A stretch of DNA of 64,000 bases from Perkinsela sp. CCAP 1560/9. Lineage: Eukaryota; Protista; Euglenozoa: Kinetoplastea. The stretch lies in the NCBI GenBank assembly GCA_965644495.1, contig CBFFSA010000001.1, positions 3,596,001 to 3,660,000 of the forward strand. Reading direction: 5' to 3'. Position 1 is the first letter of the stretch. Every line of letters starts with the position of its first letter. The notes beneath the pieces were generated by a model. It was not told the origin of the DNA, searched no databases, and saw only the letters and a list, made by a program, of their open reading frames with translations. A program made the position numbers and the translations under genes. Shown one piece after another: positions 5,008 through 45,568 of this stretch.

Positions 5008-5094
5008 TATGTCAAAGTGGTAAAGTGGTGGAATACTGTCTCCCCCGTTTATGTGGAGCCTCTTGACTTCCGCGCAATATTTTACTAGCAATTA

Positions 5095-6371: not shown

Positions 6372-6482
6372 TATATGCAGTCGGATTCTCGCACAACTTT
6401 TTTAGCTTATCGAATTTTAATAATCTTTTATGTACGAAAGAACTTTTGTTCCTGTGTTCTTATTGTTAACTTCTTTATTGGT

Positions 6483-7184
6483 ATGAACGCTGCTGGCATC
6501 AGTTGTAAGGATCCGTTTCCATGTGAAACAGAAATGACTGGCAGTGGTAATAGCTTACACTCTACTGAAGGTTTAGGAAGCAATCAACAAAGTGTATCCC
6601 GGGCAGGAAAAGTCAGGAAGTCCACATTGCCGCAGGAATTCCAACTCTTCCGTGTTGTCAAGAATGTGCGAAACACGCACAGTTCTTGGTTGGACACCGT
6701 ACCGATATGTGAGTGGAGCGGAGTCATTTGCGAAGATGGACAGGCAAAAGAAATATATTGGGGGTGGCGCGACTTGTCGGGAACAATAGATTTTGAGTCC
6801 TTGCCTCACTCTTTAAATGCGTTTTCCGTTTGCACAAATGATCTCTCCGGGAACGTAGCTTTCGAGAATCTGCCACAAGTTCAGTATTTTAGCTTAACCA
6901 AAAATGCCTTCTCAGGTACTCCAGTGATCGAATATCTCTCAAATAATTTAATTGTGCTATTTCTAAGTTACAACGATCTTGAAGGTTTCGTCGATTTTAC
7001 GACCCTTCCCACATCTTTGAAAGAATTATGGTTACGGGCAAACGAAAAGTTGACCGGTGATTTGGACATTCCAAAACTTCCACTTTTGCTTCAGTATGAT
7101 GTGGCATGGACTAGCATTACAGTATCAAATGGAAGGGAAAATAGATGGCTTTCGACTCCCTTAAAACATGGCTTGCTCTGGTAG
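6483..7184 (+). CDS. Leucine-rich repeat protein, lineage-expanded family
   Basis: GKV...LPQE...SW...CEWSGVIC cap followed by LPxxLxxLxLxxNxxxG repeats. The upstream part of ORF 6264 lies in transposon DNA, so ATG 6483 is preferred. Confidence 0.85.
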   Translation: MNAAGISCKDPFPCETEMTGSGNSLHSTEGLGSNQQSVSRAGKVRKSTLPQEFQLFRVVKNVRNTHSSWLDTVPICEWSGVICEDGQAKEIYWGWRDLSGTIDFESLPHSLNAFSVCTNDLSGNVAFENLPQVQYFSLTKNAFSGTPVIEYLSNNLIVLFLSYNDLEGFVDFTTLPTSLKELWLRANEKLTGDLDIPKLPLLLQYDVAWTSITVSNGRENRWLSTPLKHGLLW

Positions 7185-7521
7185 AAAAGGAGTGTTGTCT
7201 TTTATAGTCTATATACACAATTTTTGTCTTTTACAGTCTACTACATGAACATGCATAGGGTTTGGTTGATTATTGTGCACGTCACAAGTCTTGAATCAGT
7301 ATCAGGTGGAATATTTCGCACCTTGTTTGAGGCGAATATTCCATCAGGTATTTGTTAGTCGCACCTGTTCATAGTCACAACTTATAAATTCATAGTCACA
7401 ATTTATAAAGTCACCCTATTCCCAACATTTACTAATGACTATCATATTTCTCATTTTCCATTATCCAATCTCATTTTTACGTTTTTTTTTCGTTTTTACC
7501 TCTCTCCTTTCTTCACCCTAC

Positions 7522-8346
7522 ATGGCATCCACCATTCCCTCCCCCGAGGCCCTCTTAACACTGGGTCAGTCTATGAACCTGGAGCGCTTTCTCCAGCTCC
7601 CCCGTGCGCATCGCGTCGCGGTCATCCCCTACTGCTCAGTCGAGGTCCGGCGTGAGATCGCGGCCCTGGCTAAGGAACCCTCGGCGGCCGTTGCCGAGGC
7701 CCCCGAAGACTCCACCCCGGAACTCTCCCTGCTCGACTTCAACAAATCCCCTGAAATCCTGACGCTTCACCGCGGGCCGACGGGCATCCATGCCGTTGCC
7801 GCGCGTGATCTCCGTGCGGGAGAAGAAATATATACCCTCCGAGGCCCTGTGCTGCCGTACGCAACCATCTTTACCCTCCAGGTCACCCAGGGACTTCACA
7901 TGAACCCCTATGATGGCTCCGAGTTCATTGCCCATGGGTGCCGTCCGAATATTCAGGTCGTGGTGGATGAGCTCCCGGAGGGACCAAAGTGTGCGATCGG
8001 GCCCGAAGGTATCGAGGTCGCGAACAAGAATGAGACCCAGGACTTTATTCTCACTCACCCCTACGTGTTGCGCTGGATCACGTTGTGTGATATTCCTAAA
8101 GGTGCGAGTTTGAGTTTTAACTATCTAACGACGGAGTACGTCATGGATAAGCCCTTTGATTGCCTCTGTGGAGTGATGAAAACCGGAGACGTCTCTGGTG
8201 GAGGTCACCCGGAAGGGATTACGTGCTTTGGGAATATTAGTGGCTTCAAGTTTCTAAGTGCGCAAGATCGTGCCGCGTTGGCCCCGTATATTACGCCAGT
8301 CGTAAAGCAGGCTGCAATTGCGGAGGGATTATTGAGTCAACCGTGA
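7522..8346 (+). CDS. SET-domain protein with post-SET cysteines (putative lysine methyltransferase)
   Basis: GIHAVAARDLRAGEEI, FIAHGCRPN, DIPKGASLSFNY and FDCLCG...CFG. ATG 7522 follows a pyrimidine tract. Confidence 0.85.
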   Translation: MASTIPSPEALLTLGQSMNLERFLQLPRAHRVAVIPYCSVEVRREIAALAKEPSAAVAEAPEDSTPELSLLDFNKSPEILTLHRGPTGIHAVAARDLRAGEEIYTLRGPVLPYATIFTLQVTQGLHMNPYDGSEFIAHGCRPNIQVVVDELPEGPKCAIGPEGIEVANKNETQDFILTHPYVLRWITLCDIPKGASLSFNYLTTEYVMDKPFDCLCGVMKTGDVSGGGHPEGITCFGNISGFKFLSAQDRAALAPYITPVVKQAAIAEGLLSQP

Positions 8347-22106: not shown

Positions 22107-22592
22107 ATGTTGCGTTTGGCATGGAAGGTGTCTTCGCGCATCATTCCCGGCTACCTTCGCTATAAACACAAAGACATTGTAGTCCCCCCTGATCGATGCG
22201 AATTCATTGCCATGAGAAATTCTTCGGGTCCTGGAGGTCAAGCAGTGAATGCATCTTCAAATAGAATTGAATTGCGAGTGTCTGGAATCCACCGCGTGCC
22301 GTTTCCAAATATTGATAACGAAACGTGGTCAAGATTCTTAGCCAGACATCGAAACTCTGTATGCATGAGATCGGATACTTTGATTATACACTGTAGAGAG
22401 CATCGTTCTCTTTCTGCCAACAAAACGGGGTGTATAGATAAAGTTCGACACATGATAGCCAATTCCTCCTTTGTTGAGCCTCGGGCGGAGATTATTCCTC
22501 CGAAAAGTGAAAATAGAAAACAGAAAATCGTTACAAAAAAGAAATTTAAAGGAACTAAAATGCTTGCGAAAATCGCTAGATCACTTTCCTGA
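22107..22592 (+). CDS. Mitochondrial peptidyl-tRNA hydrolase, RF-1/GGQ domain (ICT1/ArfB-like)
   Basis: SSGPGGQAVN motif, CREHRSLSANK, basic C-terminal tail and an MLRLAW targeting-like N-terminus. Confidence 0.85.
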   Translation: MLRLAWKVSSRIIPGYLRYKHKDIVVPPDRCEFIAMRNSSGPGGQAVNASSNRIELRVSGIHRVPFPNIDNETWSRFLARHRNSVCMRSDTLIIHCREHRSLSANKTGCIDKVRHMIANSSFVEPRAEIIPPKSENRKQKIVTKKKFKGTKMLAKIARSLS

Positions 22593-22630
22593 AATACTTT
22601 CCTGTATAATGTTATGCAAGTTAAAGGTTA

Positions 22631-22765
22631 GTGTGATACAAAAACCCCCCACAGTGAAAAGTCACCCCCCTCTAACTTTTCAGTCAAGTGCCCGTTTGAG
22701 CTCATTTTTGTTGCATTTTGCAGATCCCAACGCAAAGACTTTGCACATTAAAACATGGAACTAAA
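22631..22765. repeat. Solo terminal fragment of a Tc1-like element related to 27818-28767
   Basis: AAAAGTCACCCCCC...CCGTTTGAGCT...TTTTGTTGCATTTTGCAGATC...GACTTTGC matches 27838-27927. Confidence 0.65.
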
Positions 22766-22905
22766 AATCTCAAATGCGGGCATCCGATAGACGGATTATC
22801 ACTTTCTTCACATTTTTCAAGAGACCAATTTCTCACATTTCAACTAATTAAATCTTCCCCCATGAGAAATTCAATTATTTCTTATGGCTGATGATCTCAT
22901 GGCAG

Positions 22906-23468
22906 CAGATGGCTCCGCCTTCTGCTTTTTGCCTTGCTCCTCCTCCTTCCTCTACGATTTTGCAGATCACAAATGTAACAAGCCTTAGCGTTGATCAAAT
23001 CACACTCGTTGACGGGTCAACCAAATGGCAGCCACTTCGTTGACAGTCGGGTTTATTGTCAACGAAGTGGCAGTCAATTGGTTGACCCGTCAAAGAAGTA
23101 GAGACGTACCCGGATATTTTACTGTCAACGAAGTGGCAGCCAATTGGTTGACCCGTTCCCAATCCTAACATCTCCGTGGTTCCAAAGCAGATCCTAGGGC
23201 TTCTGTTGTTGTTGTTGAGCTCCTTACAGATTCCCATGCGAGGAAGTCGTCGTCGCTACATCGAAAAGGCAGAAGGCTCCGCCTTCTGATTTTTGCCTTG
23301 CTCTTCCTCCTTCCTCTACGATTTTGCAGATCACAAATGTAACAAGCCTTAGCGTTGATCAAATCACACTCGTTAACGGGTCAAACAAATGGCAGCCACT
23401 TCGTTGACAGTCGGATTTACTGTCAACGAAGTGGCTGCCATTTGGTTGACCCGTCAACGAAGTAGATA
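22906..23468. repeat. Direct duplication (about 200 bp, period about 364) with a ~90-bp palindrome in each copy
   Basis: 22906-23105 matches 23269-23468. Hairpins at 23007-23093 and 23370-23460, with an extra half-arm at 23120-23157. Confidence 0.85.
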
Positions 23469-24252
23469 CATAGCCAAATTTCCTCCCCCTTTTGTAGTTC
23501 CGCCTTCAACCCAACAGGTAGTAAATAATGCATTGGAATGATCATTCCCAGGGTTACATTTCACAGGTCGATGTGTAGGGGTGGCATTGTAATGGCATCA
23601 CGTAAGATGTCGTGATCAATTTCTTACATATGATATGTTTTTTTATAGCTTTTCTAAAATGATCAATCATCTGGCATGCAAAATAAAAAAACTCTTTAAA
23701 AATATTTTGATGCAATACGCAGCATTTAAGCAAAGTATACATTTGTTGGTTTCATTGACAAGTATATTTGATTCTCTATGAACAGTACAACTGAAGCTGC
23801 ACCGGCCTTTCATTCGTCCAGACGCGGAAAAGTTACAAAGAGTGCTTTGCCTCTAGAATATTCTCTTTCTCGTTTCATAGAAAAAGTAGAAAATCCGCAT
23901 TCCTCGTGGAAGGCAGATAACCCAGCATGTGAGTGGAAAGGAGTGAAATGCGATTTCGGAGGACATTTGCTTTGCTTGGCTTGGGCTAACTATGGCTTGC
24001 TTGGGACACTTCTCTGGCATCATACTCCTCCGATACGAGGAAACTTTTTTGTACATTGTAATTCTTTGCAAGAAAATGTGGATTTGAGTCAACTGGAAGA
24101 TGCAACAGAGCTGTGCAATTTAAGTCACAACAAATTTCAAGGTATGATAGATTTTACGCAATTGCCATCAGGCTTGGATTCACTGTGGCTTTCATACAAT
24201 GAATTCTCTGGAAAAGTAGATCTTACAGCCTTGCCCACTGGACTTCGATTGT

Positions 24253-24401
24253 TATTATAGATACAGTTTCTGTACCTTGTTGGTACATTTTGCTAGCCCT
24301 TCCTTTCTTTTCCCGGAAACGGGCATATTCTTACTTTTAAATGCCCGTTTCCGGCTGACGGCTAGCTGGAACTGTCCCTCTTTGTCGCGGAAGTAGGGGA
24401 C
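24253..24401 (+). ncRNA. Spliced-leader (mini-exon) RNA gene-like sequence, 5'-truncated orphan
   Basis: TTATAGATACAGTTTCTGTACCTTGTTG|GTA contains the conserved euglenozoan SL core TACAGTTTCTGTAC, the TTG exon end and a GT donor at 24283. It is followed by a perfect stem CCGGAAACGGGCAT/ATGCCCGTTTCCGG and a further GTCCCT/AGGGGAC stem. Confidence 0.7.
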
Positions 24402-24864
24402 GCACTTCGCACTCTTCACCCCTCCCCGGCTCGCTCTCTTCGAGTGAGCTTTCTTCCCTCCCCGGCTCTCTACTTCTCGTGCTTTCTTCTCCCGGGAGCT
24501 ATGCGCCATGGTGGCCTCCTTTGAGGACCACTGGGCGTGCTACAGCGGGAGGACACGTTGTATGCGTGTATAGGGGATGCGAACTTGCACCCCTCTCTCC
24601 CTACATGCTGTAGCGAGTGCGGAGGTAACGGACCTCCCCATGATGCATCATGATCCACGATAGACCATCTGACAGCATGAACCCACGGCTTGACCGTGTT
24701 GCAGCATGAACCATGGCTATACGTGCTGTAGCATGACCGATGGGCGACTCGTCTCCTACCTCGCACTCCACTCTCTGTGTGACACCCGTCGTATGCGGGT
24801 CATGCGCTGATGGTATCGGCCGTCACACAGAGAGACGTATCTCTGCGCCACGAGCGTATGATCA
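24255..24864 (+). mobile_element. 610-bp SL-headed insertion without TIRs
   Basis: Bounded by TA at 24253-24254 and 24865-24866 inside an LRR codon run. GC-richer than the flanks, with internal short repeats and a 13-bp inverted repeat (24771-24783 / 24822-24834). Confidence 0.7.
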
Positions 24865-25613
24865 TAACCCTTCAAAATAACGTATTTTGTGGAACGCTAA
24901 TTTTAAATTTTCTTCCAGGTAGCATGAAATTTGTTTCCCTTAGGAACAATCAATTCTCTGGTATACTGCATCTGACTTCCTTGCCCCAGAGTCTACGAAG
25001 GATGGATCTGAGTCAAAATTCGAAACTAAACGGTGAAATCGATAGGAATTTATTTTCTCCTGATCTCACAATGGTGAGTCTCTAGTTCACCATTTTTTGT
25101 CGCAAAAAAATACTCACAGCGACTCACAGCGATCTACAGGTACTCAAAGTTTCTGCTATTCCATACAGAATTGCACTCAGTGTTCTAGACTTCTTGTTCA
25201 AAAGTTATTTGGTGTAAAAATAGAATTTACCTTCTCTAAATCTTTTTCTAGAAGATTTTTTTATTTATAAGTAATGTCGGTGTGCTAGCAGCTTCGTTAA
25301 AAAGCGGTGGTTGTTGGTAAACGGGCTTCGCAAATTGCTTCCCACTAACGACGCCGTGTATGGCCTCGCGCGGGCCCTCGCCATACCTCTCCCCTTCGGC
25401 TTCACAAATTGTTTCCCACTAACGGCGTCACGTATGGCTCAGGCCAGCTCACGCGGGCAAAACCTGGCAAAACTTAACAGGTTTCAACCCTCTTTATTTC
25501 TATAGTAATAGAAAATCAATGAATTTAATCATAGATTCGCATAAATCCTAATTTCTTCTGGTCATCAAAAAGTTTTTTCTTATAAAGTTTCTTATAAAGT
25601 TTTTTCTTATTTA

Positions 25614-25920
25614 CTGTACCCCTCCTACTTGTTTGTCACTACTTTTCGCGAAAAGGTGACAGATAACTAGGCGGACCAGTGTGCGACAGATAACTAGGGA
25701 GGGGGTCTGTCACAAAAAAAAGGCAGAGCATGGAATTACAGAAACGGTTTTATAATAGCACTACGCACGACCATTCGCTTGAAACACAAAAAGGAAAAAT
25801 ATAAGTTTCATTTTATGATTTTTTTTGTCAAAAAGTATTTTACCTATTTTTAAAAAGTGACAGATAACTAGGGGGGGGGAGGGGGGGTGACGTGTGACAG
25901 ATAACTAGGGGGGGGGACAG
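25614..25920. mobile_element. TA-flanked MITE
   Basis: Degenerate left TIR CTGTACCCCTCCTACTTGTTTGTCAC and right TIR GTGACAGATAACTAGGGGGGGGGACAG, with TA on both sides. GACAGATAACTAGG occurs four times. Confidence 0.7.
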
Positions 25921-26430
25921 TAATTACAATCATTTATGCAACTCCCAGTAGTCGGTTTACTTTCCCCTAAGCCATTAAGCATGACCAGTCTTTTGAAGTG
26001 CCTCTTCCAGTCTTTCGGGGTTTTCCGACGAAAAAAATACTCACAGCTACTCACAGCGAATCACAGCAGCCCACAGCGATTCACAGAAACCCGCACATAT
26101 CTACAGATACTAACTACAGACTCACCAATAGTTAAAGAAGGAACGGGAATACTTTCTTGATCACCTGAATTTACTAAGTTTCTGTATCGGTAGGTATGTC
26201 AAACTCAAAGTTAAAGCCTGACTCGTTTTCCCGGATTTTATCGGGATACTTTATTTCTCAGTTTCCTTAAATAGAATGTAAGAAAGAAAGAAAACAAAAG
26301 CAGTGAAACAAATTCGGCTTTCTTTATTTTCTCCTCCGTTGAAAAAGTAAACACGCAAAGTGTGTGCTGCCAAATCCATAATGTTTTTAACTCGAGGTCT
26401 ATTTTCAGTTATTTTTTTCTTTTTAATGTC

Positions 26431-26787
26431 ATGCTAGAATCATTTTTCTGCGTACGTGATTTTTTTATTTTGCGCCGTTGGGGTAATAAAATAGAAAATA
26501 GTAGGAAAAAGAAATTAAACGTTCTCAATTCTGCTCAACGCCTTCGTCTTCCCTTACTTGCACAAGCGCCTTGGGGAGCCATTGTGGTCATATCTGCTGC
26601 ACTTCTTTTTTTTGGGGCTGATTTCGCCTATGGAGCTTATCGTCGCTACGCGGATCCAACAACAGACAATGAAGAACGAAACCGCGTTCGTGTTCGTAAG
26701 CAACAAGAAGCAAAGCAGTGGGTCCGGGCAGAAACTGTGGCCTATTCAAAAAGTCGTCCGAAAGGATACCGAGGAGAGGATAAATAG
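26431..26787 (+). CDS. Small hypothetical single-pass membrane protein
   Basis: Hydrophobic helix WGAIVVISAALLFFGADFAYGAY followed by a charged tail. Start uncertain. Confidence 0.5.
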   Translation: MLESFFCVRDFFILRRWGNKIENSRKKKLNVLNSAQRLRLPLLAQAPWGAIVVISAALLFFGADFAYGAYRRYADPTTDNEERNRVRVRKQQEAKQWVRAETVAYSKSRPKGYRGEDK

Positions 26788-27425
26788 AGGGAAATATACA
26801 CTTTATGTAAATAAATTAATTAATGGAGACAATGAAGTGTGCCACTTTTTTGGATGACACTGGATGACTAATTTTGTTGATACTCCAGCTTATCTATACC
26901 CTCTCACCTTTATAGTTCATTTGCCAGAACGAACGTTTGCCCGTTCTTCAGGAGAGCATCTGACTTCCGGCTAAGCTCTTTTTTTGATTCGCAGTTTGCT
27001 TTTCTTTCGATTTTTTTCTCTTTTCTAACACCCTTATTGCGCAGGAAATCCCTTTTATACTTTTCGGCTTTCAAAAATAACGAAGCGATAGTGATGGTAC
27101 GTCTCACTACAAGGTTCGTTTGTGCCTTCACTCCATGCTCATATCTGTCTTGGACGGCACTCGATCGCACTGGATGACAGTGAACAACTGCAGATTGTCC
27201 AATTCAATGATCGTTTTAGCTTTTCTCTCACACGTTGAACTGGTTGAAGACCGTAAAGGTAGACGTAACAAGCGAAGCTCGTCTAGAAAAGTTCGAAAAA
27301 CATGAAAAATGATCAGAAATTGATCACTTTTAGCAGAAATATGATATTTATGCTACAAGCGACACTATTTAAATACGAAATTTTTTGGGTTTTTATCAGC
27401 GCCACTTTAATTAAGGCAACTTTAA

Positions 27426-33247: not shown

Positions 33248-33634
33248 CGAATCAATGGAAATTATCATTGGTGCAATGGACGTGGTACACGCAACGCAAA
33301 ACTTCGAGAAAAGATTTGAGCGGTGTCGTATACTAGAATTAAATCCGGATGTCAATGCTATCTCTAGAACTGCGAATTTTTTTCGGACATAACACGTAGA
33401 AGTAGACTCGTTGAAACCATGATATCTTCATCTATCACCTCTATTTTAGAATCTATTCTTGGAATACATTCTATTCTTCTAGTGTCTCTTCTTCGAATAT
33501 ATTAGGATAGAATTTCTAACCTACCTGTATGTATCTGCATATTTCATAATCTATTAAACATTGCTCGAAAATCTCCTCCCTAGTCGACCTGAATTTACTT
33601 TTTCCCTCACCCCACCCTCCTACCCCGGACAGTG

Positions 33635-35338
33635 ATGCTCCCCAGTACCCTTCACCGGTGCGCACTCAAAACTTCCCGACACCGTCTTGCCGTCATGGCC
33701 CCTTCCCCCGAGCTCGGCATTACCATCCCCTCCCACGACACCGTTCCACTTCCCACCTCGCCGCTCCCTCCACTTACCCCCACCGGGGTCTTTCCCAAAG
33801 GTCAGTCACTACCCTCTGTAGGAGAGCGTCACACCGAGGCCCTGGGTCCACACCTCCTTCCCTTCACCACGGAACTCACCAAACGCCCCCCGTTGTCCTC
33901 TCCCTCCTCCCCAACGAGTCCCCTTCCCTCAACCACAACCCGTACCACAACTCCCAGTGTCGCCCCCTCTGTCGTAAACACCATCTTAAATCCTGCTGTC
34001 GTAAACACAACCCCCAATCCCCCTGTCCTCAGCACAACACCCCATTCATCGGTACTCACGACAGCATCGAACTCCGCTGTTCCTTCCTCCCCCTCCCCCC
34101 TTTACGACCTCGCGACCGGACTTCCCTTCTCCCCTGTACTACGCGACGCCCTTCACGAGAAATCCAGCGACTTCTCGTCTTCCTCTTCCTCTTCTTCCTC
34201 TTCTCTCTCCTCTCCCTACTGGGTCACCGACACCCACCTCGCGGCCTCCGGTGTCGAGCTGCTCCCCCAGTTCCGAGGCAAAGGGTTCGACACCCGTCGC
34301 CTGGGAAGACACCCCCCCGGTCCACAACACCGGTCCAGCCCCCCCGAGCGTCGGTTCGCGCAGGGCCACGATCTCGAGCTCACCCCCACGGAGCAAGCCA
34401 TGGTCGACGCCGGGGCGATGCTCTACCACCTCTCCCAAACCCGTGAGGGGGCCACGCTGGAGGGGCTCCGCGGGCGGCTGGTCCCGACCGACGCGCTCAC
34501 CGCGGCGCCGTTGCCCGCTCCCACCTCGAATGTGCTACGGGAGGCGGTGGGGGGCTACCCCACCAGTCAGTGGGTCCGGGAGGAGTTCCTGTGCCTCGGG
34601 CTGCGGCCGGCCCCGGAGGCCCGGGCGATTTGTATCACGGTGGAGGAGACGTATGAGGATGAGGATGAGGCGGGGGGTGGTGGGGGGTCTACGGATTACC
34701 TCCACCGCCTGGGGTTCTCGCGTCGTCCCGTGGCGAGTTACTCGGAGACGTATTACAACCTCGCGGATCTCGTGGTGTCGTCTGAGTTGCTGACGAGGCT
34801 GCGGGAGTGTTACCCGAGGAGTGCGAGTACGCGGAAGTGTTACCGGCCAACGGTGGCGGTGCCATTGCTGAAGGTGGCGCTACGACACTCGCTTACCTCT
34901 CCGTTTTGGGTTACCATGAAAGGGGCATTGTATGCCGGGTCACGTGTCGTGGATGACTCCCTGGGGGTACGCCCCATGGCGAGAAGTGAGGCCGTGCTGC
35001 ACAACACGGAGTGCTGTGCGCAGTCGGAAGATTTTTTGGAACGACTGCAAAGTGGGGTACCTCGAGCGATGTCTGGGTATAACGGAAAGCCGTTCTCCGA
35101 GGAGTCACAGTCGGCGCTGCGGGAGGCCAAGGGGGTCCGAGGGTTCAATAGCGTGTATTGGATGACCCGGAAACAGGCACGGGAGCTGGGGTCGGGGATT
35201 CGCCCTGGTTCCGTGTCGGTGACAGTGCCCATGTCAGGTGGAACTCGGGAATTTTATAACGTGGACCAAACGGAGTCACCCACCCGGATTATGGATCGTT
35301 TGCAGTTTTTGGGTCTCCTGCAGCCAGTGGGCGTATGA
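33635..35338 (+). CDS. Tc38/RBP38-family (ArdC-N-like) kinetoplast nucleic-acid-binding protein with P/S/T-rich extension
   Basis: Repeated modules such as SGYNGKPF...RGFNSVYWMTRKQARELG...FYNVDQT. ATG 33635 follows a pyrimidine tract and AG. Confidence 0.8.
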   Translation: MLPSTLHRCALKTSRHRLAVMAPSPELGITIPSHDTVPLPTSPLPPLTPTGVFPKGQSLPSVGERHTEALGPHLLPFTTELTKRPPLSSPSSPTSPLPSTTTRTTTPSVAPSVVNTILNPAVVNTTPNPPVLSTTPHSSVLTTASNSAVPSSPSPLYDLATGLPFSPVLRDALHEKSSDFSSSSSSSSSSLSSPYWVTDTHLAASGVELLPQFRGKGFDTRRLGRHPPGPQHRSSPPERRFAQGHDLELTPTEQAMVDAGAMLYHLSQTREGATLEGLRGRLVPTDALTAAPLPAPTSNVLREAVGGYPTSQWVREEFLCLGLRPAPEARAICITVEETYEDEDEAGGGGGSTDYLHRLGFSRRPVASYSETYYNLADLVVSSELLTRLRECYPRSASTRKCYRPTVAVPLLKVALRHSLTSPFWVTMKGALYAGSRVVDDSLGVRPMARSEAVLHNTECCAQSEDFLERLQSGVPRAMSGYNGKPFSEESQSALREAKGVRGFNSVYWMTRKQARELGSGIRPGSVSVTVPMSGGTREFYNVDQTESPTRIMDRLQFLGLLQPVGV

Positions 35339-35825
35339 ACAACATTCACGCATGGTTTGTGTTTGAGAATGTCTGTTTCTGTTTTTTTCTAAATCATTAA
35401 TTGTGTTGTAGAGTAAAATCACGAAGTAGATCAGAAGTCGGTGTGTAAGTTAATAGGCCTTTTGGTGGGATATTTTTTTACTAAATGCTACTCTGATTTA
35501 GAAATGTTTGATTTTTTATCTAGCCCTTAGTACACTAGAACCCCTTTTCTCTTATCATGCGTTGTAGATGCGATTCACTTTACTATGAGATACTCAGAAA
35601 AGGAACTCTTAAATATGTATCATATTTCGTAATCACATTGACAAACTTTGTATAAATTCGTAACGATAAGAATCGGGCGGCTTTTATCTTTGTGTCACGG
35701 TTTGCACATCATTTTTCTTTTGTTGGTCAACGGCAAAGCTTTTGTATTTTCATATTTTTGCTCAAAGATTAAGCCGAATCTTACAGGAGATATTCTTTTT
35801 ATCTTTCCGTGTTTTTTGCTACCTG

Positions 35826-37223
35826 ATGATTCGACTTTCGTCTAAATGGTTCAAGTCTAGCAAAATTTTTGTTCCGTCTTCCGCTACCTCAACGGGATCC
35901 AAGACCGCTCCCTCCGCCGCTCCTCGTGCTTTAAGTGCTGCCACTGGAAAACCGTATCCCTCCGGCCTGGCCCAAACCCTAAACATTCGCGCATTTCGCT
36001 CCAACCTATGGCTCACGGAAGCCCAAATGGCATTGTGTGGTGTCACGCTACGTGAGGATCAGCGTGGCAAAGGGGTCGTCGTCCCTCGCCGTCCTCGATC
36101 CTACACGCTCTACAACGCCTCACAAACCACTGACTTTGACAAAGTCCGCGCCATGCAGGGAAAGCTTAATGTCACCAACGCCTTGACCGGGAACGCAATC
36201 GCCGCCACGGCCGCCGCAAAACTCACCGCCTCCCTCGGGAACTTCCCCACCAACCAGTGGGTCACACGACACCAAATCCACGCCCTCTCCTTAAAACTAC
36301 TCCCCGGCGCCACCCCTGTAGTCATCACACACATCACTCTAAAAAAACGTCCCCCACGAAAACGACCCTTGGCCATTACACACCCCTCCTCCTCCTCCTC
36401 CTCCCCCTCTTCTCCCCCCACCTCATCCACCAAACGTGCCACAACTCTCACAACGGCTCATCTCTCACCTTCTTCGACTTCTACAGCTTCCCCTACATCT
36501 CGCTCGTCTTCTTCGTCTTCACCCTCCCCTTCCCCCACGACCGCTTCTTCTACTGCTACTGTCACTACCACCACTACGACTACTACTACTCACTACTACA
36601 ACCTGGCTTCTCTCGCCCACCCCTCCACCCTCTCCCTCGCCCACACCCTCTACCCCCGCTCCGCCCTCTCCCGCAGGCCCTACCACCGCGGCGTCGCCTA
36701 CCCCTTACTCCGGGTCGCCCTCGAGCGCGGGTTCCGCTCCCCGTACTGGCTCAGCCGCGACACCGCCGCACGCCGGCGGGTCGGGCTGCGGGAGGGGGCG
36801 ACCGGGGCCGCGGTGTGCTTCTACCGGAAGCGAAAGCTGGTGCTGTACAACGCCGAGGAGACGACGGCCCCGGGGAGGGTGGTGCCGCGGGGGGGGACGG
36901 GACGAACGGCCCCCCGGGGGGGTCGGTGGGGTCCCGGGGGGTTGACGTTGCTTCCGAGGTCGGCGATTTCGGGGGGGCAGTACCCGGAGCCGACGCGGTC
37001 GGAGTTGTTGGAGGTGGCGCAGCAGAGAGGGTACCGTTCGCCGTTGTGGATGACACGGCGGCAGGCGGCGCATTTGAATGCGGAGGTGCGAAGCGGGGAG
37101 GAGCCGACGGCGGTGCATTTTTATAAAGGGTCGCTGGAGTTGTTTAACGCGGAGCAAACGAAGAATCGGTACTTTTTTGCGAATCGACTGAAAAAATTTA
37201 GACACGTGCGAAAGAAGGGGTAA
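35826..37223 (+). CDS. Tc38/RBP38-family protein
   Basis: Four modules (SAxTGxxY...WLT..Q...YNA.QT) and an MIRLSSKW targeting-like N-terminus at 35826. Confidence 0.85.
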   Translation: MIRLSSKWFKSSKIFVPSSATSTGSKTAPSAAPRALSAATGKPYPSGLAQTLNIRAFRSNLWLTEAQMALCGVTLREDQRGKGVVVPRRPRSYTLYNASQTTDFDKVRAMQGKLNVTNALTGNAIAATAAAKLTASLGNFPTNQWVTRHQIHALSLKLLPGATPVVITHITLKKRPPRKRPLAITHPSSSSSSPSSPPTSSTKRATTLTTAHLSPSSTSTASPTSRSSSSSSPSPSPTTASSTATVTTTTTTTTTHYYNLASLAHPSTLSLAHTLYPRSALSRRPYHRGVAYPLLRVALERGFRSPYWLSRDTAARRRVGLREGATGAAVCFYRKRKLVLYNAEETTAPGRVVPRGGTGRTAPRGGRWGPGGLTLLPRSAISGGQYPEPTRSELLEVAQQRGYRSPLWMTRRQAAHLNAEVRSGEEPTAVHFYKGSLELFNAEQTKNRYFFANRLKKFRHVRKKG

Positions 37224-37942
37224 GGAGATGAATAAATAGAGGAAACGCTAGCTCGTAAAAAAGGTAATCTCCTTTTTTGGGGGGGCATGTCAGGCGTCCT
37301 TTTTGCGGTATCTTGTCTTGAATGTAAGTTTCGGTGCATTATGGTGCATGCAGTGCGTATCATACACTGCAATGTACACTGCAACGGTGTAACTGCAAAC
37401 TAATTGTTATTCACTCGGTAGGAGTAAACCTCTATACTAGAGGGAGGGCGTGGTACTTCACATCCCGTGGCCCACGATTCGCTGGTTTTATAGAGATGAA
37501 AACGACATGACCTCTTTCGTTATGACGATGTAACACTTTCAAGAGCATTTTTCGATCTTCGACAATGGCATGTACGGCTGTCGCACCGTTCTGGGCATCC
37601 AACTTATTCGGCTTCAATCACCTCGTACACACACATTGTACATTTTACCATTTACCATGACAATTACATCTCCGATTGAAACAACTTTAATTGTTTCTCA
37701 GTTCGAATTGTATAGATTTAGTATCTCCACCTAGCAAAATTATCTATTTCACAAATTCAGATAATATTTTCACATCCAGCAAACAAAACAAACCACAAAG
37801 AAATCCTTTTTTCCACACTACCACCCATCCACCCCCAGCCATGCTCCGTTCGGCCGTCCCCACACGGTGAACCTGACCCCACAACACCCAAAACCACCCA
37901 CCCCAACCCAAAAACACACCCTTCCCCCCTTTTCTCCTCTCC

Positions 37943-39073
37943 ATGTTCCGTCTCTTCCTCCCCTCCCGCACGCCCTTCTCCCCCCGCTCTCTCGCCTACA
38001 GCGCCGCCACCGGTGCCCCCTACCCCGCCGCCACCGCCGCCGAGCTCGCGGCCAAGGGCTACCGCTCCAACCTGTGGCTTACCCGAACCCACGCCGCGTT
38101 GGCTGGGGTTGCGCTCCTCACCGAGGAGATCCCCAACGGCCACCCCCTCCCCCTCTCCCGGGGACTCGTCACGTTATACAATGCCGACCAGACCACCGAC
38201 CCGGGCCGTATTAACGCGTTAAAGGGCCAGCTGTTCCCGACACACGCCCTCACGGGGCTACGACTCGGTCCACAGGCCTCGGCAGCGATTGCCGCCTCCG
38301 CGCGTGTGATCAGCGGGGACGCACGCACCTGTAATGAGTGGGTCACGGCACGAGAGTGTGAGATACTCGGGTGGGGACGACGCGGGGGTTCGAAGGAGAG
38401 GGCGGGGAAAGGGGTCTCGGTGGAGGTGGTGGTGGAGCAAACATCGACGGACCCGGACGGGCTGCCGAATGTCACCGAGGTGAGGAAGGTGGTGGAATAC
38501 GTGAATTTGACGGAGCTGGAGAGCCCGTGGAGGGTGCGGACGGCGAGGGAGATGTACCCGATGGCGGTGTCCACGGGGCATAAGTACTCGATTGAGCCCG
38601 CGCTGGTGTTGTTGAAGGCGGCGGTCAGGTATGGGTACTCCTCGTGTTACTGGCTCACGTCGGAGGGGTGTAAAGACCTTGGGATTCAGGTGCGTACTCC
38701 CGAACAAGGGGTTCACCTGCTCCTTCCTCGGCGGAACTCCGAGGTGGTGTTGTATAATGCGGACAATACGTTGGGGAGAGCCAACATCGTAAAGGCGGCG
38801 TACCGCGCCCGGTTAAAACCACGCTCCGCCAAAACAGGCTTGTTGTTTCCCCCGGAAACGGGATCCCAGTTAGAGAAACACCGGGAAGAGCGTGGGTTTG
38901 GCAGTCCATACTGGTTAACTTACCCCCAAGCCTTCGTGATCGGGGTGAAAATACTCTCTAACGAACGCCCGAAGACAATTATGATGTCTGGTAAAGTGAC
39001 TAACTTGTTTAACGCGGATCAAACGGATAATCCCCGAAAAGTTTGCCTCTATGCCGAGGATGGAAGGTGGTGA
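37943..39073 (+). CDS. Tc38/RBP38-family protein
   Basis: MFRLFL N-terminus and four modules, e.g. RGFGSPYWLTYPQA...LFNADQT. Confidence 0.87.
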   Translation: MFRLFLPSRTPFSPRSLAYSAATGAPYPAATAAELAAKGYRSNLWLTRTHAALAGVALLTEEIPNGHPLPLSRGLVTLYNADQTTDPGRINALKGQLFPTHALTGLRLGPQASAAIAASARVISGDARTCNEWVTARECEILGWGRRGGSKERAGKGVSVEVVVEQTSTDPDGLPNVTEVRKVVEYVNLTELESPWRVRTAREMYPMAVSTGHKYSIEPALVLLKAAVRYGYSSCYWLTSEGCKDLGIQVRTPEQGVHLLLPRRNSEVVLYNADNTLGRANIVKAAYRARLKPRSAKTGLLFPPETGSQLEKHREERGFGSPYWLTYPQAFVIGVKILSNERPKTIMMSGKVTNLFNADQTDNPRKVCLYAEDGRW

Positions 39074-39519
39074 ATTACACATTTTAGAGCAAGCTCACGC
39101 GTCTCGTAACGTTCTTCAGGTACGTACCTAGACAGTTTGGACTCGTCTTCTTTGCTTAACCAACTCAAATTATTGTGTTGCCCCCACTAAAACAAACTTG
39201 CAGATTTTTGTAAAACTGATTAGATATTAAAGATACGGTACGCAAAATCGTGTTGTAAAGTACATAGCCTACATAAAGTACATCTACGAATTTCTCGGTG
39301 TTCCGTTAGACTTAAACGTGAAGGCTTGGCGTACACACAGCTTTCTACAATAATCCACATTAGAATAGAATTTTTTACGGAACAACGACTTACAGTAGTA
39401 CCATTACAGCTTTTTCTCTTTTTTTATCGTGTTGGACAACTATAATTTTCAATAATCAAAGTCGTATACAAATCATTGACAAAACTCTTATTGGCTTTCC
39501 TTACATCCTACACTTTATA

Positions 39520-40644
39520 ATGTTGTTTCGGAACCTCTCTTTCTTTGCGAAACAAGTCGCCTCAAAGAAACCCAATTCCACTCTCCCCGCTGCTTCCGCA
39601 GTTTCCGCGCTCACCGGCGCGCCTTATCCCAAAAGCAAAACCACCGAACTCGTCGCCCGTGGGTTCACCTCCCCCGTATGGCTAACAGAGAAACAGATGG
39701 AGACCATCGGGGTGGGGCTGAAGCCCGGGGCCCAGGGAAAAGGTCAAAAGCTCTCCTTCTCGGCCGGAACCTCCTGCACACTCTACAACGCGACCCAGAC
39801 TACGGACCCTGCGCTGATCGAGTCTTTGATGGGTCGCTTGCACCCGACGAATGCGATTACCGGATATGACATTGGTCGTGAGGCCGCGCCTTTGCTGCTG
39901 AAGCGTCTCGGGAACTTTCCTACAAACGAGTGGGTGACGGAAAAACAAGTCTCGGGTCTCGGATTGAAATTAAAACCTAAGGCAAGGGGTGTGGAGATTG
40001 AGCTCGCGTTTTCTTCCCCTTCCGCAGACCCTATAAAGGACGAGGGGCTACTCCTGGATCGTGGGGTGACGGTGACGTATTACAACGTGGGAGATCTCGA
40101 GAACCCGGAGGTGGTCAAACGTGCGAAACGACTGTCCCCGATTTCTGCCTCCACAGGGCGTAAGTATGCGAAGGAGATTGCCGTTCAACTGCTACGTGAG
40201 GCACTGCAGAAAAGGTACGAATCTCCGTTTTGGTTGACTCAGAATGCGTGTCGAGTTTTGGGACTGACGTTAAAGCCACAGAGCGAGGGGGTGCCGGTCT
40301 CGGTTGCGTCCTCGTCCAAACAGATTGTGCTGTTCAATGCGGACTGCACTAATAACCCCTCCAAGGTGGCTTCAGAGTCGTACAAGGCACAGTTCCAACC
40401 ACGCTCTGCGGTATCTGGGGCATTGTATCCCGAGCCCACGAGCTCGGAGCTCTCATCGTTCGCGCTGAAAAACAAGTTCCGTAGCCTTTACTGGCTGACG
40501 TACAAACAGGCGAGCTTCCTAGGGGTGGACATAGTGCCAGGACAGAAACCGGCAGAGGTGTTTTTAGGCTCCGTTTACGTTAAGGTGTACAACGCCGACC
40601 AGACCACGAACAAGAAGAAGGTAGAGGAGCACGCGACCAAGTGA
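39520..40644 (+). CDS. Tc38/RBP38-family protein
   Basis: MLFRNL N-terminus and four modules, e.g. FRSLYWLTYKQASFLG...VYNADQT. Confidence 0.87.
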   Translation: MLFRNLSFFAKQVASKKPNSTLPAASAVSALTGAPYPKSKTTELVARGFTSPVWLTEKQMETIGVGLKPGAQGKGQKLSFSAGTSCTLYNATQTTDPALIESLMGRLHPTNAITGYDIGREAAPLLLKRLGNFPTNEWVTEKQVSGLGLKLKPKARGVEIELAFSSPSADPIKDEGLLLDRGVTVTYYNVGDLENPEVVKRAKRLSPISASTGRKYAKEIAVQLLREALQKRYESPFWLTQNACRVLGLTLKPQSEGVPVSVASSSKQIVLFNADCTNNPSKVASESYKAQFQPRSAVSGALYPEPTSSELSSFALKNKFRSLYWLTYKQASFLGVDIVPGQKPAEVFLGSVYVKVYNADQTTNKKKVEEHATK

Positions 40645-41233
40645 GCCGCGGGGTGCGAGGATCACCGGATGTCTGCATGGGAGCGTCTTGATGTGTCATG
40701 ATTCTCCTCTTTTTGGTAATTAGTTTGTTTAGATTATATTTTTTACGATATACTGAATGTGTGGTATCACACACACCTCGTCTTCTGAATCTTGGAAAAT
40801 GTTTAGAAATGTGTGTATTCCATAATAAAAATTGGCAATAGAGTACTTTCAGAGTAGAATAGTATGTAATTTTTGTGGCCTTCTTTTCTCTCGCACTATT
40901 TATATGATTTCTGGCTCCTTACACGATACCATTTTGAATACGTAAGGAATCACAATGGAGAACACAAGAGTAACGAAAGTTTTTTAATTCGCAACCCTTG
41001 TTTATCCTTCATTTACGAAATCTTTTTTTAGAGATTTTAGATGGTACTCTACTTATTAAACCCATGGCGGCGAATAAGACATAACCGAAAGAAGGATTTA
41101 CCGAAAAATAGGCCTTTGAAGGCTTCACACGTACCTCTCCATTTTTTCTCTCGAAGTTGTTAAGCACCTTTTTTCAACGCTATTTTTCATCCTCTTTTTT
41201 TCACTTTTTAGCCCTTTGAGTTTCGTTCCCGAC

Positions 41234-42007
41234 ATGTTTGATCAAACCCCTCCACAACCCCAATCACTACTTGTGAGCCGATTTCTTCTACCCCATCTTC
41301 ACGCTACCGATTCCACCCCCTCCCCTCCCACATCCCATCTCGGCAAATCCCGTCGGTTACTGCACCCACCGGAGGTTGATCTCCTCACCCTCACCCAGCA
41401 TACCCTGTGGCCGCATCACTCTTGGAACCGCGATGTCCAGGCGTGCATGTGGGCCGGTGTGATCTGCGACGTCTCCGGGGAGATCCCCACGGAGCTACGC
41501 TGGGCGGGTTTTCTGCTACATGGCAACCTTACCTGGGAAGCGCTCCCGCGTACAACACGCCGCGTAATACTCTCTAACAACATGCTGGGAGGGACGCTGG
41601 ACCTCACCGCATTGCATGACATCGTGGAATTCTTCTCTGTGTCGTATAACCGGTTGGGAGGAACGCTGGAGCTGCGCGAGTTGCCTCCAAATATTGCTAC
41701 TCTAAATGTAGCGCACAATCGATTCACCGGAGGGGTGGATCTGCGGATGCTTCCCAATACGCTCACCGGACTGTTTTTACAGGATAACTATTTGAGTGGT
41801 GTGGCACACATCCCAAGCGATCCGGACGCCCGGAAGAATAGAGATCCAAAAACGATAGACCTTACTTTGAACCCGAATTTAATCGTATTTCCCGACGTGG
41901 GAATTATCCGAGAAATACGGTACGATGGAAGTGCCGAGCCGTGGGAGTATTCCTTCCTGGTTCTTGGCGCTTTGGCCGCAGTTTTAGGTATTGATTTGAT
42001 TTTTTAA
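41234..42007 (+). CDS. LRR family protein with C-terminal hydrophobic anchor
   Basis: HSW...CMWAGVIC cap, LRRs and a terminal FLVLGALAAVLGIDLIF. Confidence 0.85.
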   Translation: MFDQTPPQPQSLLVSRFLLPHLHATDSTPSPPTSHLGKSRRLLHPPEVDLLTLTQHTLWPHHSWNRDVQACMWAGVICDVSGEIPTELRWAGFLLHGNLTWEALPRTTRRVILSNNMLGGTLDLTALHDIVEFFSVSYNRLGGTLELRELPPNIATLNVAHNRFTGGVDLRMLPNTLTGLFLQDNYLSGVAHIPSDPDARKNRDPKTIDLTLNPNLIVFPDVGIIREIRYDGSAEPWEYSFLVLGALAAVLGIDLIF

Positions 42008-42110
42008 TCAAACTGCTACAAAAGTTTGACGGGTTGAATATCCAAGTATCGTAATATCTGTTGAAGAAAATGCTTTTTCACTTCAGTAAGCTTTGAACTC
42101 ATTTTATGTA

Positions 42111-42401
42111 GTAAACCATGTTCCAGGATAGTATACCCATGCCCACTTAGTATGCCGACCCCCCCCTTCCCAGCAACAGGAGCGTGATACGTGCCTTTTT
42201 TAGAAGCGCCAGAGCATTTTTCTAGCAATCACACGGTATTAAATCGCATTTTAAGGTCAAGACACCATTTTTCTAGCAACTACAGATGAGAAACGCGCCG
42301 CGAAGCGGCGCGAAAATTTTTTTCTGCATTTTAGACAAAATTTAGTATACCGTACCCACTTAGTATACCTACTAGGTATACTATCCTGGAACATGGTTTA
42401 G
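42111..42401. mobile_element. TA-flanked MITE
   Basis: TIR GTAAACCATGTTCCAGGATAGTATACC and its reverse complement ending at 42401, with TA on both sides. A second partial copy lies at 19284-19505. Confidence 0.8.
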
Positions 42402-42440
42402 TACCAAACTGTGCCGTTTCTTCAGAACTTCAGAAGCTAC

Positions 42441-42731
42441 TACTCCCCCTGTCATTAATAATGATAATCTTAAAAAAGATATCGTTCTATGTGGTGAAGA
42501 CTCTTAAAAAATTATCAACTTATTTTCATGCACGCAAGATTTTCTTAAAAAAAAAGTTTTTTGAACTAAAAAACTACTGGTAAGGTTTCAAAACCGGCCC
42601 AAATTCGGGTTAAAATTTATCATTTTTGACCTGAAAATCGTGTTTTTTGGCGAAAACTATGTACTACCCCTGCCATTAATGATAATGATAATAATAATCT
42701 CAAAAATATTATCATTATCATTATTAATGAC
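42441..42731. repeat. Degenerate MITE with pogo-like terminus
   Basis: TACTCCCCCTGTCATTAATAATGATAAT at 42441, a similar copy at 42663 and the inverted ATTATCATTATTAATGAC at about 42714-42731. Confidence 0.55.
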
Positions 42732-42998
42732 TTTTTTTGCACTATTTTCGTTATTTTTCGGAATTTTTATTATACCTGTAGCTAGTTATTGTACCGGGGA
42801 GGTACATTAACACGGACGGGGGTTTACTTTGATTTATTAGTATTAAGTTATTAGTATAAGTTTCACACATGATTCTATGTTTTTTATAGGATCATCAACT
42901 TTTTTCTCGACGATACGCTCATAACATCTTTATAAGGCATTATTTTCTTATCATTGTATTAGTTTTTTTTTCTTGTGCTAACACGCTACATCGGTAGA

Positions 42999-43865
42999 AT
43001 GCTGCAAAATGCATTGTTCTCTGACCCACATGCCCCTGGACGAAACTCCGAAGCAATCTCAGATACCCCTCCTTGCCGACTGGGAAAAGTAGCTGGCATT
43101 ATTTTACCTCCACAGGTTGCTCTCGATCTTTTTCTGCAAAACATCACGTCACGCGATCCTTCTTGGTCCACGGAGAGAGATGTTTGTAAATGGGGACACG
43201 TATCCTGCGATGAGAATTCCACTCTTCGCAAGCTTATGTGGTCAAACCTTGGTCTTATGGGGACTCTTGCATGGCGCTTTCTTCCGCACAGCCTTGAATT
43301 CATACTTCTTGGAGGCTATGGCAGTAATAATGAGCTTTCAGGTTCCCTGCCTGCTGCGCACCTCCCAAGGAATTTGGTCACACTGTCGTTGTCGGAGAAT
43401 AAATTCTCGGGAGAGCTTTATCTGCTAGACATGCCTCAAACTCTCCTAGATTTGTCCGTTCGTTCGAATTGTTTCTATGGCGTGCTTTACCTTCCTGATT
43501 TACCACCTACGGTAAGAACATTTAGTGCCTCCTACAATAAATTCTCCGGTCCCCTTGTCCTTGATAAACTCCAAGAATGTATTGTAGAATTGTATCTCAC
43601 AGCGAATTTATTTGAAGGGAGTGTTCGATTAGACCAATTGCCATTTACAATGCGTCGACTTCACCTGTCCGACAATAATCTTTCTGGGTGCATTGAACTT
43701 CATTCACTACCGGTTACTCTTGTTGCGTTGTTTTTACACTGTAACAAGTTTAGCGGACCGCTTGATGTATCTCATGTACCCCAATCACTCCAATCGCTCT
43801 ATCTTTTCGGAAACCAGTTCACTTCAGTCTACCCCGAGGTACTTCCATCTTGTGTTAAAATATAG
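42999..43865 (+). CDS. Leucine-rich repeat protein, lineage-expanded family
   Basis: GKV...LPPQ...PSW...CKWGHVSC cap plus about 8 LRRs. Confidence 0.88.
   Translation: MLQNALFSDPHAPGRNSEAISDTPPCRLGKVAGIILPPQVALDLFLQNITSRDPSWSTERDVCKWGHVSCDENSTLRKLMWSNLGLMGTLAWRFLPHSLEFILLGGYGSNNELSGSLPAAHLPRNLVTLSLSENKFSGELYLLDMPQTLLDLSVRSNCFYGVLYLPDLPPTVRTFSASYNKFSGPLVLDKLQECIVELYLTANLFEGSVRLDQLPFTMRRLHLSDNNLSGCIELHSLPVTLVALFLHCNKFSGPLDVSHVPQSLQSLYLFGNQFTSVYPEVLPSCVKI

Positions 43866-44221: not shown

Positions 44222-45568
<1,347 letters not shown>

What the first reader, a model, noticed from the sequence alone, without database searches (positions are those of the whole stretch)
24253..24866. Spliced-leader RNA sequence has moved into an LRR gene, starting at SL exon position 12
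Seen: a 610-bp insert splits an LRR repeat at a TA. Its first 28 nt (24255-24282) are TTATAGATACAGTTTCTGTACCTTGTTG, then GT and stem-loops. Known: kinetoplastid SL exons are 39 nt, contain ACAGTTTCTGTAC and end TTG|GT, so 28 nt equals positions 12-39. SL-specific non-LTR retrotransposons (CRE, SLACS, CZAR) insert at about the 11/12 junction. Because the GT and intron-like part are present, this is not a processed mRNA. Inference, three options: a whole SL repeat unit excised and re-integrated (the right junction reads into AAC, the SL start); an SL-derived SINE-like element mobilised by a CRE-type enzyme; or the end of a non-autonomous CRE at an ectopic site.
Basis: partly seen in the sequence, partly recalled or inferred. 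Interest (0 to 1): 0.88.

Follow-up and report, generated by a model that had tools for sequence, protein, structure and literature searches.

The report
Retroposon copy headed by relic spliced leader
The insert is a recent copy of a short, non-coding retroposon that broke a leucine-rich-repeat gene, and its spliced-leader head most likely marks an RNA that was trans-spliced before it was copied back into DNA.

Summary
The insert is real, but it is not a moved SL gene piece. An empty-site allele in public run X2 sets it at window 24257-24869: 613 bp in place of a single T, with no target duplication. It belongs to a dispersed family with at least 58 matches. Copies share a fixed 3' end (..CATRACC), many are 5'-truncated, and there are three subfamilies.

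Only 24259-24282 matches this organism's own 38-nt SL exon (positions 15-38). Other copies start anywhere from position 3 to 20, most often 10-12.

The GT after the SL belongs to the element body. The true SL intron differs (GTATGAGAAGC..) and shows no similarity to the body. At least nine unrelated bodies, including about 4.8-kb LINEs with RT and an R2-like endonuclease, are joined exactly at the exon's last base. Some variants have a fresh SL joined right after a downstream AG. This points to trans-spliced RNAs that were reverse-transcribed.

About half the copies sit in LRR coding repeats at one register. No AG-bearing source copy was found.

First-stage notes of this scan flagged the same phenomena on other DNA of this genome; none had been followed up.

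The parts
24257..24869 (+). Whole inserted element: one copy of 'family A', a short non-coding retroposon
   Evidence: The empty-site contig in run X2 skips exactly this stretch. The genome holds at least 58 matches, about 17 of them near full length at 95-100% identity.
24259..24282 (+). Relic spliced-leader head, matching positions 15-38 of the organism's 38-nt SL exon. The AT at 24257-24258 cannot be assigned.
   Evidence: Exact match to the exon of the SL RNA genes in L071.
24283..24296 (+). First 14 nt of the body (GTAC...GCTAG). It ends in an AG that acts as a secondary trans-splice acceptor in other copies.
   Evidence: Copies L013, L014 and L016 lack exactly these 14 nt, with the SL end joined to CCCTTCC. 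The true SL intron starts GTATGAGAAGC.
24263..24375 (+). Stable nested hairpin that pairs part of the SL head with the body
   Evidence: Minimum free energy -59.4 kcal/mol, z = -5.63, 0 of 200 shuffles as good. No Rfam family matches.
24390..24395 (+). Hot spot where 5'-truncated copies begin (query positions 138-143)
   Evidence: Six independent truncated copies, L018 to L023, start here.
24781..24869 (+). 3' region conserved between subfamilies, ending in the fixed terminus ..GAGCGTATGATCATAACC
   Evidence: This region matches a second subfamily at 75-77% identity, and all family A copies end within ..TATGATCAT(A/G)ACC or ..TATGATATCAT.
23778..24256 (+). Upstream piece of the interrupted LRR gene
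   Evidence: ORF. LRRNT_2 scores 22.4 bits, above its cut-off.
24870..25085 (+). Downstream piece of the interrupted LRR gene, in frame with the upstream piece in the empty-site allele
   Evidence: The X2 contig joins 24256, one T and 24870, which keeps the LxxLxLxxN frame. LRR_1 gives a weak hit.

Best explanation
Window 24257-24869 is a recent daughter copy of a roughly 600-bp non-coding, non-autonomous non-LTR retroposon (family A of three related subfamilies).

Its RNA carried the organism's spliced leader at the 5' end because it had been trans-spliced like any kinetoplastid Pol II transcript. A LINE-encoded reverse transcriptase copied that RNA from its fixed 3' end by target-primed reverse transcription. 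The likely source is one of the abundant LINEs with RT and an R2-like restriction-like endonuclease, which are themselves SL-headed. The cDNA was joined to the target before reaching the RNA's 5' end, so only SL positions 15-38 were kept.

The insertion landed at the family's preferred site, immediately 5' of the Leu codon of the LxxNxFxG part of an LRR coding repeat. It removed one T and put a stop codon into the gene.

Shown here: the insert limits and the empty allele, the dispersed family with 5' truncations, the exon-exact SL junctions on many unrelated bodies, the AG-dependent secondary junctions, and RT plus RLE in the LINEs.

Inferred: trans-splicing as the source of the head, which LINE supplies the enzyme, and target-primed reverse transcription as the mechanism.
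For: 1. An empty-site allele exists in run X2, with no SL sequence at the empty site.
2. The genome holds at least 58 matches with a constant 3' end and 5' starts at query positions 1-22, 138-143, 159, 197-209 and 261.
3. The SL 3' part plus GTA occurs 265 times against 0 in the control.
4. SL heads of family A/B/C copies begin at positions 3 to 20 even among copies 97-100% identical, so the template RNA carried a near-complete SL.
5. At least nine unrelated bodies, including about 4.8-kb LINEs with open frames of up to 1571 aa, are joined exactly after the exon's last G. Most do not start with GT.
6. L013, L014 and L016 have the SL end joined right after the next AG of the body.
7. In genome-wide double heads, the second head starts just after the CAG (9 cases) or the AAAG (2 cases) of the SL. 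Every other start has 2 cases or fewer.
8. A solitary copy of the unspliced SL RNA, truncated at position 3, shows that cellular RNAs do get retroposed (L072).
9. The body shows no similarity to the SL intron: score 17 against a shuffle mean of 14.0, SD 2.1.
10. The LINE ORF matches R2 proteins at E = 1e-34, and its C-terminus aligns to the R2 endonuclease domain with the CCHC and PD..E motifs.
Against: No source copy with an AG acceptor directly before the body was found. The AG+GTAC.. pattern gave 0 hits, and every family A/B/C body start in the assembly is preceded by the SL end apart from 3 point variants. The same holds for one LINE family.

Head starts peak at positions 10-12 rather than next to the cap, and this is unexplained.

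Many full heads share an ATC start instead of AAC, which could mean that heads are inherited as DNA.

No run on record as RNA holds the element, so trans-spliced element RNA has not been seen directly.

No LINE in hand shares more than about 11 nt of 3' tail with family A.
Confidence: 0.77

Rival explanations
1. SL-RNA-gene-derived SINE. A master gene in the largely unassembled SL array fuses the SL promoter, the exon and the first 3 nt of the intron to a foreign body. Its capped transcript is retroposed, so the head is inherited from an SL gene rather than added by splicing.
For: The junction retains GTA, as in the SL gene. No AG-bearing source copy exists in the assembly. Only two SL genes are assembled, so an array may be missing. 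The recurrent ATC heads hint at inherited heads.
Against: Nothing beyond GTA is shared with the intron. The same exon-exact junction occurs on bodies that do not start with GT. Family A variants are re-joined after a downstream AG. SL-gene upstream sequence is found only at the two true genes. With nine or more bodies, one starting with GT by chance is expected.
Confidence: 0.13
2. The SL part is a remnant or duplication of the target. A CRE/SLACS-like element inserted into an SL sequence at about position 11/12, and the SL(12-38) stretch is flanking target DNA rather than part of the mobile unit.
For: Head starts peak at 10-12. Several elements abut the truncated head of a neighbour directly (L003, L073, L075, L077). 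One 36-bp duplication includes SL sequence (L075).
Against: The empty site of this very insertion contains no SL sequence. The upstream flanks of about 40 copies are unrelated unique sequences.
Confidence: 0.04
3. A whole SL repeat unit was excised and re-integrated, or the insert is an assembly artefact, or it is a spliceosomal intron.
For: The insert size is of the order of SL repeats in other kinetoplastids. An X2 contig skips the stretch.
Against: The SL repeat here is 297 bp with a different intron and spacer. The family is dispersed with 5' truncations. The skipped stretch ends AT..CC, and X2 holds a 228-kb contig and even depth over intergenic DNA, so it is DNA rather than spliced RNA.
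Confidence: 0.02

Closest known systems
Relic spliced leaders on retroposed genes of dinoflagellates (DinoSL retrogenes; PMC6050394, PMC5585692)
   Same: The SL exon is encoded in DNA at the 5' end of a retroposed sequence and joined exactly at the exon end. Tandem relic SLs are truncated after an AG inside the SL, showing repeated rounds of trans-splicing and retroposition.
   Different: Here the host is a kinetoplastid, and the tagged sequences are the retrotransposons themselves (LINEs and a SINE-like family) rather than ordinary genes. Heads are usually 5'-truncated. No acceptor-bearing source copy is seen.
CRE1/CRE2, SLACS and CZAR: SL-gene-specific LINEs of trypanosomatids (own knowledge; listed in PMC12278014 and PMC4640811)
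   Same: The host group is the same, the elements are associated with SL sequence, and the LINEs of this genome carry RT followed by a restriction-like endonuclease.
   Different: Those elements sit inside SL RNA genes between nt 11 and 12 and do not carry the SL as their own 5' end. This insert has no ORF, lies in an LRR gene, and its empty site has no SL. Clade membership of the local LINEs was not tested.
SINEs and the non-autonomous partners of trypanosomatid LINEs (RIME, NARTc, SIDER)
   Same: The element is short, non-coding, dispersed, 5'-truncated with a constant 3' end, and occurs in subfamilies of near-identical copies.
   Different: There is no tRNA/7SL/5S head and no Pr77 hallmark. 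The head is a spliced leader. No regular target-site duplication is present.
R2 and other RLE LINEs that target multicopy sequences such as rDNA, snRNA genes and microsatellites (PMC4640811)
   Same: Insertions show register-exact site preference in a multicopy target, variable junctions with small deletions, and also fall in (GT)n (L076).
   Different: The preferred target is a protein-coding repeat (an LRR unit), and the elements are also found at many other sites.

Membership tests
Kinetoplastid SL RNA gene or repeat unit | Complete exon preceded by the SL-gene upstream region | tested here: not met
   The head starts at SL position 15. SL-gene upstream sequence occurs only at C1:661341 and C1:661638.
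Kinetoplastid SL RNA gene or repeat unit | The exon is followed by the SL intron | tested here: not met
   The intron begins GTATGAGAAGC and the insert continues GTACATTTTGC. The local alignment is no better than shuffles.
CRE/SLACS/CZAR site-specific LINEs | Inserted in an SL RNA gene between exon nt 11 and 12 | tested here: not met
   The target is an LRR gene, and the empty site has no SL sequence.
CRE/SLACS/CZAR site-specific LINEs | Encodes RT plus a C-terminal restriction-like endonuclease | tested here: not met
   The insert has no such ORF. The SL-headed LINEs elsewhere in the genome do have RT plus an R2-like RLE, but their clade was not determined.
Non-autonomous non-LTR retroposon (SINE-like) | Short, non-coding and dispersed, with a constant 3' end and 5' truncations | tested here: met
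Non-autonomous non-LTR retroposon (SINE-like) | 3' tail shared with an autonomous LINE partner | tested here: inconclusive
   Only a terminal motif of about 11 nt (TATGATATCAT) is shared with the LINE in L075. No longer homology was found.
Non-autonomous non-LTR retroposon (SINE-like) | Pol III-type head (tRNA, 7SL or 5S) | tested here: not met
   No Rfam family matches, and the head is an SL exon fragment.
Relic-SL retroposed sequence (copy of a trans-spliced RNA) | The SL is joined to the body exactly at the exon's last base, and this junction recurs on unrelated bodies | tested here: met
Relic-SL retroposed sequence (copy of a trans-spliced RNA) | Secondary junctions fall right after AG dinucleotides | tested here: met
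   There are 9 cases after CAG and 2 after AAAG in the SL, and 3 copies re-joined after GCTAG in the body.
Relic-SL retroposed sequence (copy of a trans-spliced RNA) | A genomic source copy with an AG acceptor at the junction | tested here: not met
   0 hits in the assembly. The assembly may be incomplete.
Relic-SL retroposed sequence (copy of a trans-spliced RNA) | Element RNA carrying the SL is seen in RNA data | not testable with these tools
   No run on record as RNA holds the element.

The most novel reading that the evidence does not exclude
A kinetoplastid hosts a currently active LINE/SINE system of R2-like (RLE) retrotransposons that propagates through SL-capped, trans-spliced RNAs. 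It has a register-exact preference for inserting into the coding repeats of LRR genes, so it repeatedly breaks or reshuffles a large surface-receptor-like gene family. The SL head may itself be functional, for example for capping, translation or 5' joining.
Probability: 0.3. Interest if true: 0.8.

Novelty: new variant of a known kind. Interest (0 to 1): 0.6.

Why it matters
The result implies that in this kinetoplastid the RNA intermediates of retrotransposition are trans-spliced RNAs. Each new copy carries a built-in SL tag that marks it as RNA-derived. I found this described for dinoflagellate retrogenes but not for kinetoplastids in the literature I could search.

The tag gives a simple way to list and date retroposition events. 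The insertion polymorphism between isolates shows the system was active very recently. The fixed register of insertions in LRR coding repeats suggests a sequence-specific endonuclease aimed at a protein-coding repeat, which would be a new target class for RLE elements and a force shaping a large gene family.

The missing source copies and the 10-12 peak of head starts are open questions that long reads and RNA ends could answer directly.

Tried and rejected
- Rfam, at gathering thresholds on the whole window and at permissive thresholds on the insert: nothing relevant, and no SL RNA or ribozyme family.
- Search for source copies with an AG acceptor before the A/B/C body or before one LINE body: none found.
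- Search for SL-gene upstream sequence in front of dispersed full SL heads: present only at the two true genes.
- One head-specific pattern was too narrow to be informative, with 4 copies.
- Regular target-site duplications: none above a shuffled-pair null.
- LINE partner by 3' homology: none beyond a short terminal motif.
- tRNA next to the SL genes: none.
- GAPDH search for the organism: best relatives are only about 66% identical, so no species can be named.
- Literature: the exact SL string was not found in any held paper, and no kinetoplastid report of SL-headed retrotransposons was found. One paper search had a malformed term.
- RNA evidence: no run on record as RNA. All laid runs are contigs, so no RNA ends could be read.
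I worked with loci L001-L077 and pattern counts only.
- The two pieces of the LRR gene were searched separately. The joined model was not searched.

Full report
**What is there**

An LRR-type ORF (23778-24260) runs into ..TTATTATAGATACAGTTTCTGTACCTTGTTG, followed by GTAC and GC-rich, hairpin-forming sequence. The LRR frame resumes near 24870. The upstream piece hits LRRNT_2 above its cut-off, and the downstream piece hits LRR_1 weakly. The two pieces were searched separately; the joined model was not searched. Other genes in the window (SRP54, GAPDH, a Tc-38/p38 protein) place the organism among kinetoplastids. It has no close sequenced relative: the best GAPDH hits are about 66% identical.

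**Exact limits and recency**

I laid contigs of four public runs on window 22400-27400. One X2 contig of 1025 nt matches 23436-24256 and then 24870-25072, with a single T between. Its depth (101.6) equals that of the unique flanks. X2 holds a 228-kb contig and covers intergenic DNA evenly, so it is DNA. The skipped stretch ends AT..CC, which is not intron-like.

This is an empty-site allele. The insert is therefore 24257-24869 (613 bp). It replaced one T and made no target-site duplication. The terminal ACC belongs to the insert. The empty allele keeps the LRR frame (..L L F L Q N N..), whereas the filled allele stops at the TAG created at 24258-24260. The best other copy, on contig C15, is 99.5% identical. 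The insertion is therefore very recent and polymorphic between isolates.

**It is one copy of a dispersed retroposon family**

Searching the organism's own 21-Mb assembly with the insert gave at least 58 matches, which is a lower bound.
- About 17 are near full length at 95-100% identity.
- About 13 are 5'-truncated, starting at query positions 138-143, 159, 197-209 and 261, and all run to the same 3' end.
- A second subfamily matches positions 4-287 at about 91% and positions 529-610 at about 76%.

All family A copies end in ..GAGCGTATGATCAT(A/G)ACC or ..GTATGATATCAT. A fixed 3' end with variable 5' truncation is the classic signature of non-LTR retroposition. No regular target-site duplication is seen. 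The element has no credible ORF and matches no Rfam family. Its first 164 nt fold into a very stable nested hairpin (z = -5.6).

**The real spliced leader**

Two tandem genes 297 bp apart on C1 (locus L071) carry a 38-nt exon that starts AACTTTAACGATAAAG and ends CCTTGTTG, followed by the intron GTATGAGAAGCTTCG... Their upstream sequence occurs nowhere else in the assembly. The exon-intron junction occurs at 8 loci. One of these (L072) begins only at exon position 3 in a foreign context, so it is a retroposed copy of the unspliced SL RNA.

In the window, only 24259-24282 matches this exon, covering positions 15-38. Across about 40 independent family A/B/C copies, the SL part begins anywhere from position 3 to 20, with a mode at 10-12. 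Copies that are 97-100% identical in the body differ in where the head starts. The template RNA must therefore have carried a near-complete SL.

**Why the GT is not an SL intron**

Beyond GTA, the body has no similarity to the SL intron. The local alignment scores 17 against a shuffle mean of 14.0 (SD 2.1), and 46 of 500 shuffles score as well.

More decisive is what other elements show. Full-length LINEs of about 4.8 kb, with open frames of up to 1571 aa, also start with the SL. In them the SL is joined exactly after the exon's last G to quite different bodies, such as AATTATTTT.., a T-run, and ACCATTT... In the loci in hand, at least nine different bodies share this exon-exact junction. With that many bodies, one starting with GT by chance is expected. 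A junction that always falls at the exon end, whatever follows, is what trans-splicing produces.

**Direct traces of trans-splicing on these elements**

Three independent family A copies (L013, L014, L016) have different flanks and different head starts. Each lacks exactly the 14 nt GTAC..GCTAG, so the SL end is joined to CCCTTCC, right after the first AG downstream of the old head.

Genome-wide, double heads also point to AG use. The second head begins just after the CAG of the SL in 9 cases and just after AAAG in 2 cases. Every other start position has 2 cases or fewer, and the reversed control gave 1 hit against 28. This is the same logic as the relic DinoSL copies of dinoflagellates (PMC6050394, PMC5585692). 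Head-bearing copies are transcribed, trans-spliced again at the next AG, and retroposed again.

**The likely engine**

The genome has more than 1000 RT candidates, and 150 scored above the Pfam cut-off. The SL-headed LINE in L076 matches R2 proteins best (E = 1e-34). Its C-terminus aligns to the R2 endonuclease domain, including the CCHC knuckle and the PD..E region. No AP-endonuclease domain is found in it or in its nearest homologues. These are therefore RLE-type LINEs, the broad group that includes CRE/SLACS/CZAR. I could not test clade membership. Family A shares only a terminal motif of about 11 nt with one LINE tail, so its partner is inferred, not shown.

**Target preference**

Of 32 A/B copies with both flanks in hand, 13 pass a strict LRR test. 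By eye, about half lie in LRR coding repeats. In 7 of the 8 cases where the 3' flank passes the test, including this window's copy, the element's 3' end is followed in frame, at offset 0, by the Leu of LxxNxFxG; the eighth lies 4 codons further on. Other insertions lie in (GT)n (L076) or directly against the truncated head of another element (L003, L073, L075, L077). First-stage notes of this scan had flagged the LRR register and the SL heads on other DNA of this genome; none had been followed up.

**What remains unexplained**

- No source copy with an AG acceptor directly before the canonical body start exists in the assembly, either for A/B/C or for one LINE family.
- The head-start peak at 10-12 is not what a block at the cap would give. 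It coincides with the classical CRE/SLACS site, so cleavage or joining within SL sequence by the element's endonuclease is possible but untested.
- Of 161 near-full SL heads, the mismatches fall almost only at positions 1-2, and ATC recurs often. This could be misreading near the cap, a shared flank, or inheritance of heads as DNA.
- The SL array is clearly under-assembled, which leaves room for the rival model of a promoter-driven SL-gene fusion.
- No run on record as RNA was available.

**Verdict**

The kind of event is known from dinoflagellates. Here it appears in a kinetoplastid, on the retrotransposons themselves, with an unusual LRR-register target and evidence of current activity.

Noticed in passing
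L072 about 2076-2200 (= G000 C2:801573..); also C1:410098, C20:10940, C25:23931, C49:34382, C86:12046: Solitary copies of the SL exon plus the true intron lie outside the tandem pair. The one in hand starts at exon position 3 in a foreign flank, so it looks like a retroposed pseudogene of the unspliced SL RNA.
   Followed up: partly
L001-L060 flanks; window 24240-24900: About half of the A/B copies lie in LRR coding repeats. In nearly all testable cases the 3' junction falls exactly before the Leu of LxxNxFxG, suggesting a register-specific target in a protein-coding repeat.
   Followed up: partly
G000 C1:2477630, 2482722, 2487815, 2492908: Four full SL heads (GAC.. variant) lie at an exact spacing of about 5093 bp, indicating a head-to-tail tandem array of SL-headed LINEs. 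Similar spacings of 4.3-4.9 kb occur on C41, C42 and C44.
   Followed up: no
Genome-wide: Among 161 near-full SL heads, mismatches fall almost only at exon positions 1-2, and ATC replaces AAC in dozens of copies. This could be misreading next to the cap, a shared flank, or heads inherited as DNA.
   Followed up: no
L008, L043 and L074 heads: Three copies from two subfamilies carry an extra GATAAA unit in the SL head (GATAAAGATAAAGATAC). This may be slippage or a variant SL.
   Followed up: no
L076 about 2900-8300: A LINE and a family B element both sit inside one long (GT)n tract, so the microsatellite appears to be a second favoured target.
   Followed up: no
L075 2676-3290: A family A-like copy lacking its own head is flanked by a 36-bp duplication that includes 10 nt of LRR flank plus SL positions 11-36 of the neighbouring LINE. 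Target duplications can therefore be long when the target is an SL head.
   Followed up: partly
window 22567-22900 and 25239-25900: Contig depth in all DNA runs rises 10- to 60-fold here, marking other high-copy repeats next to the LRR gene. A motif from 25320-25345 recurs upstream of an SL-headed element in L037.
   Followed up: no
window 33632-47451: This stretch holds several tandem ORFs with the Tc-38 (p38) domain, and a GAPDH gene lies among them.
   Followed up: no
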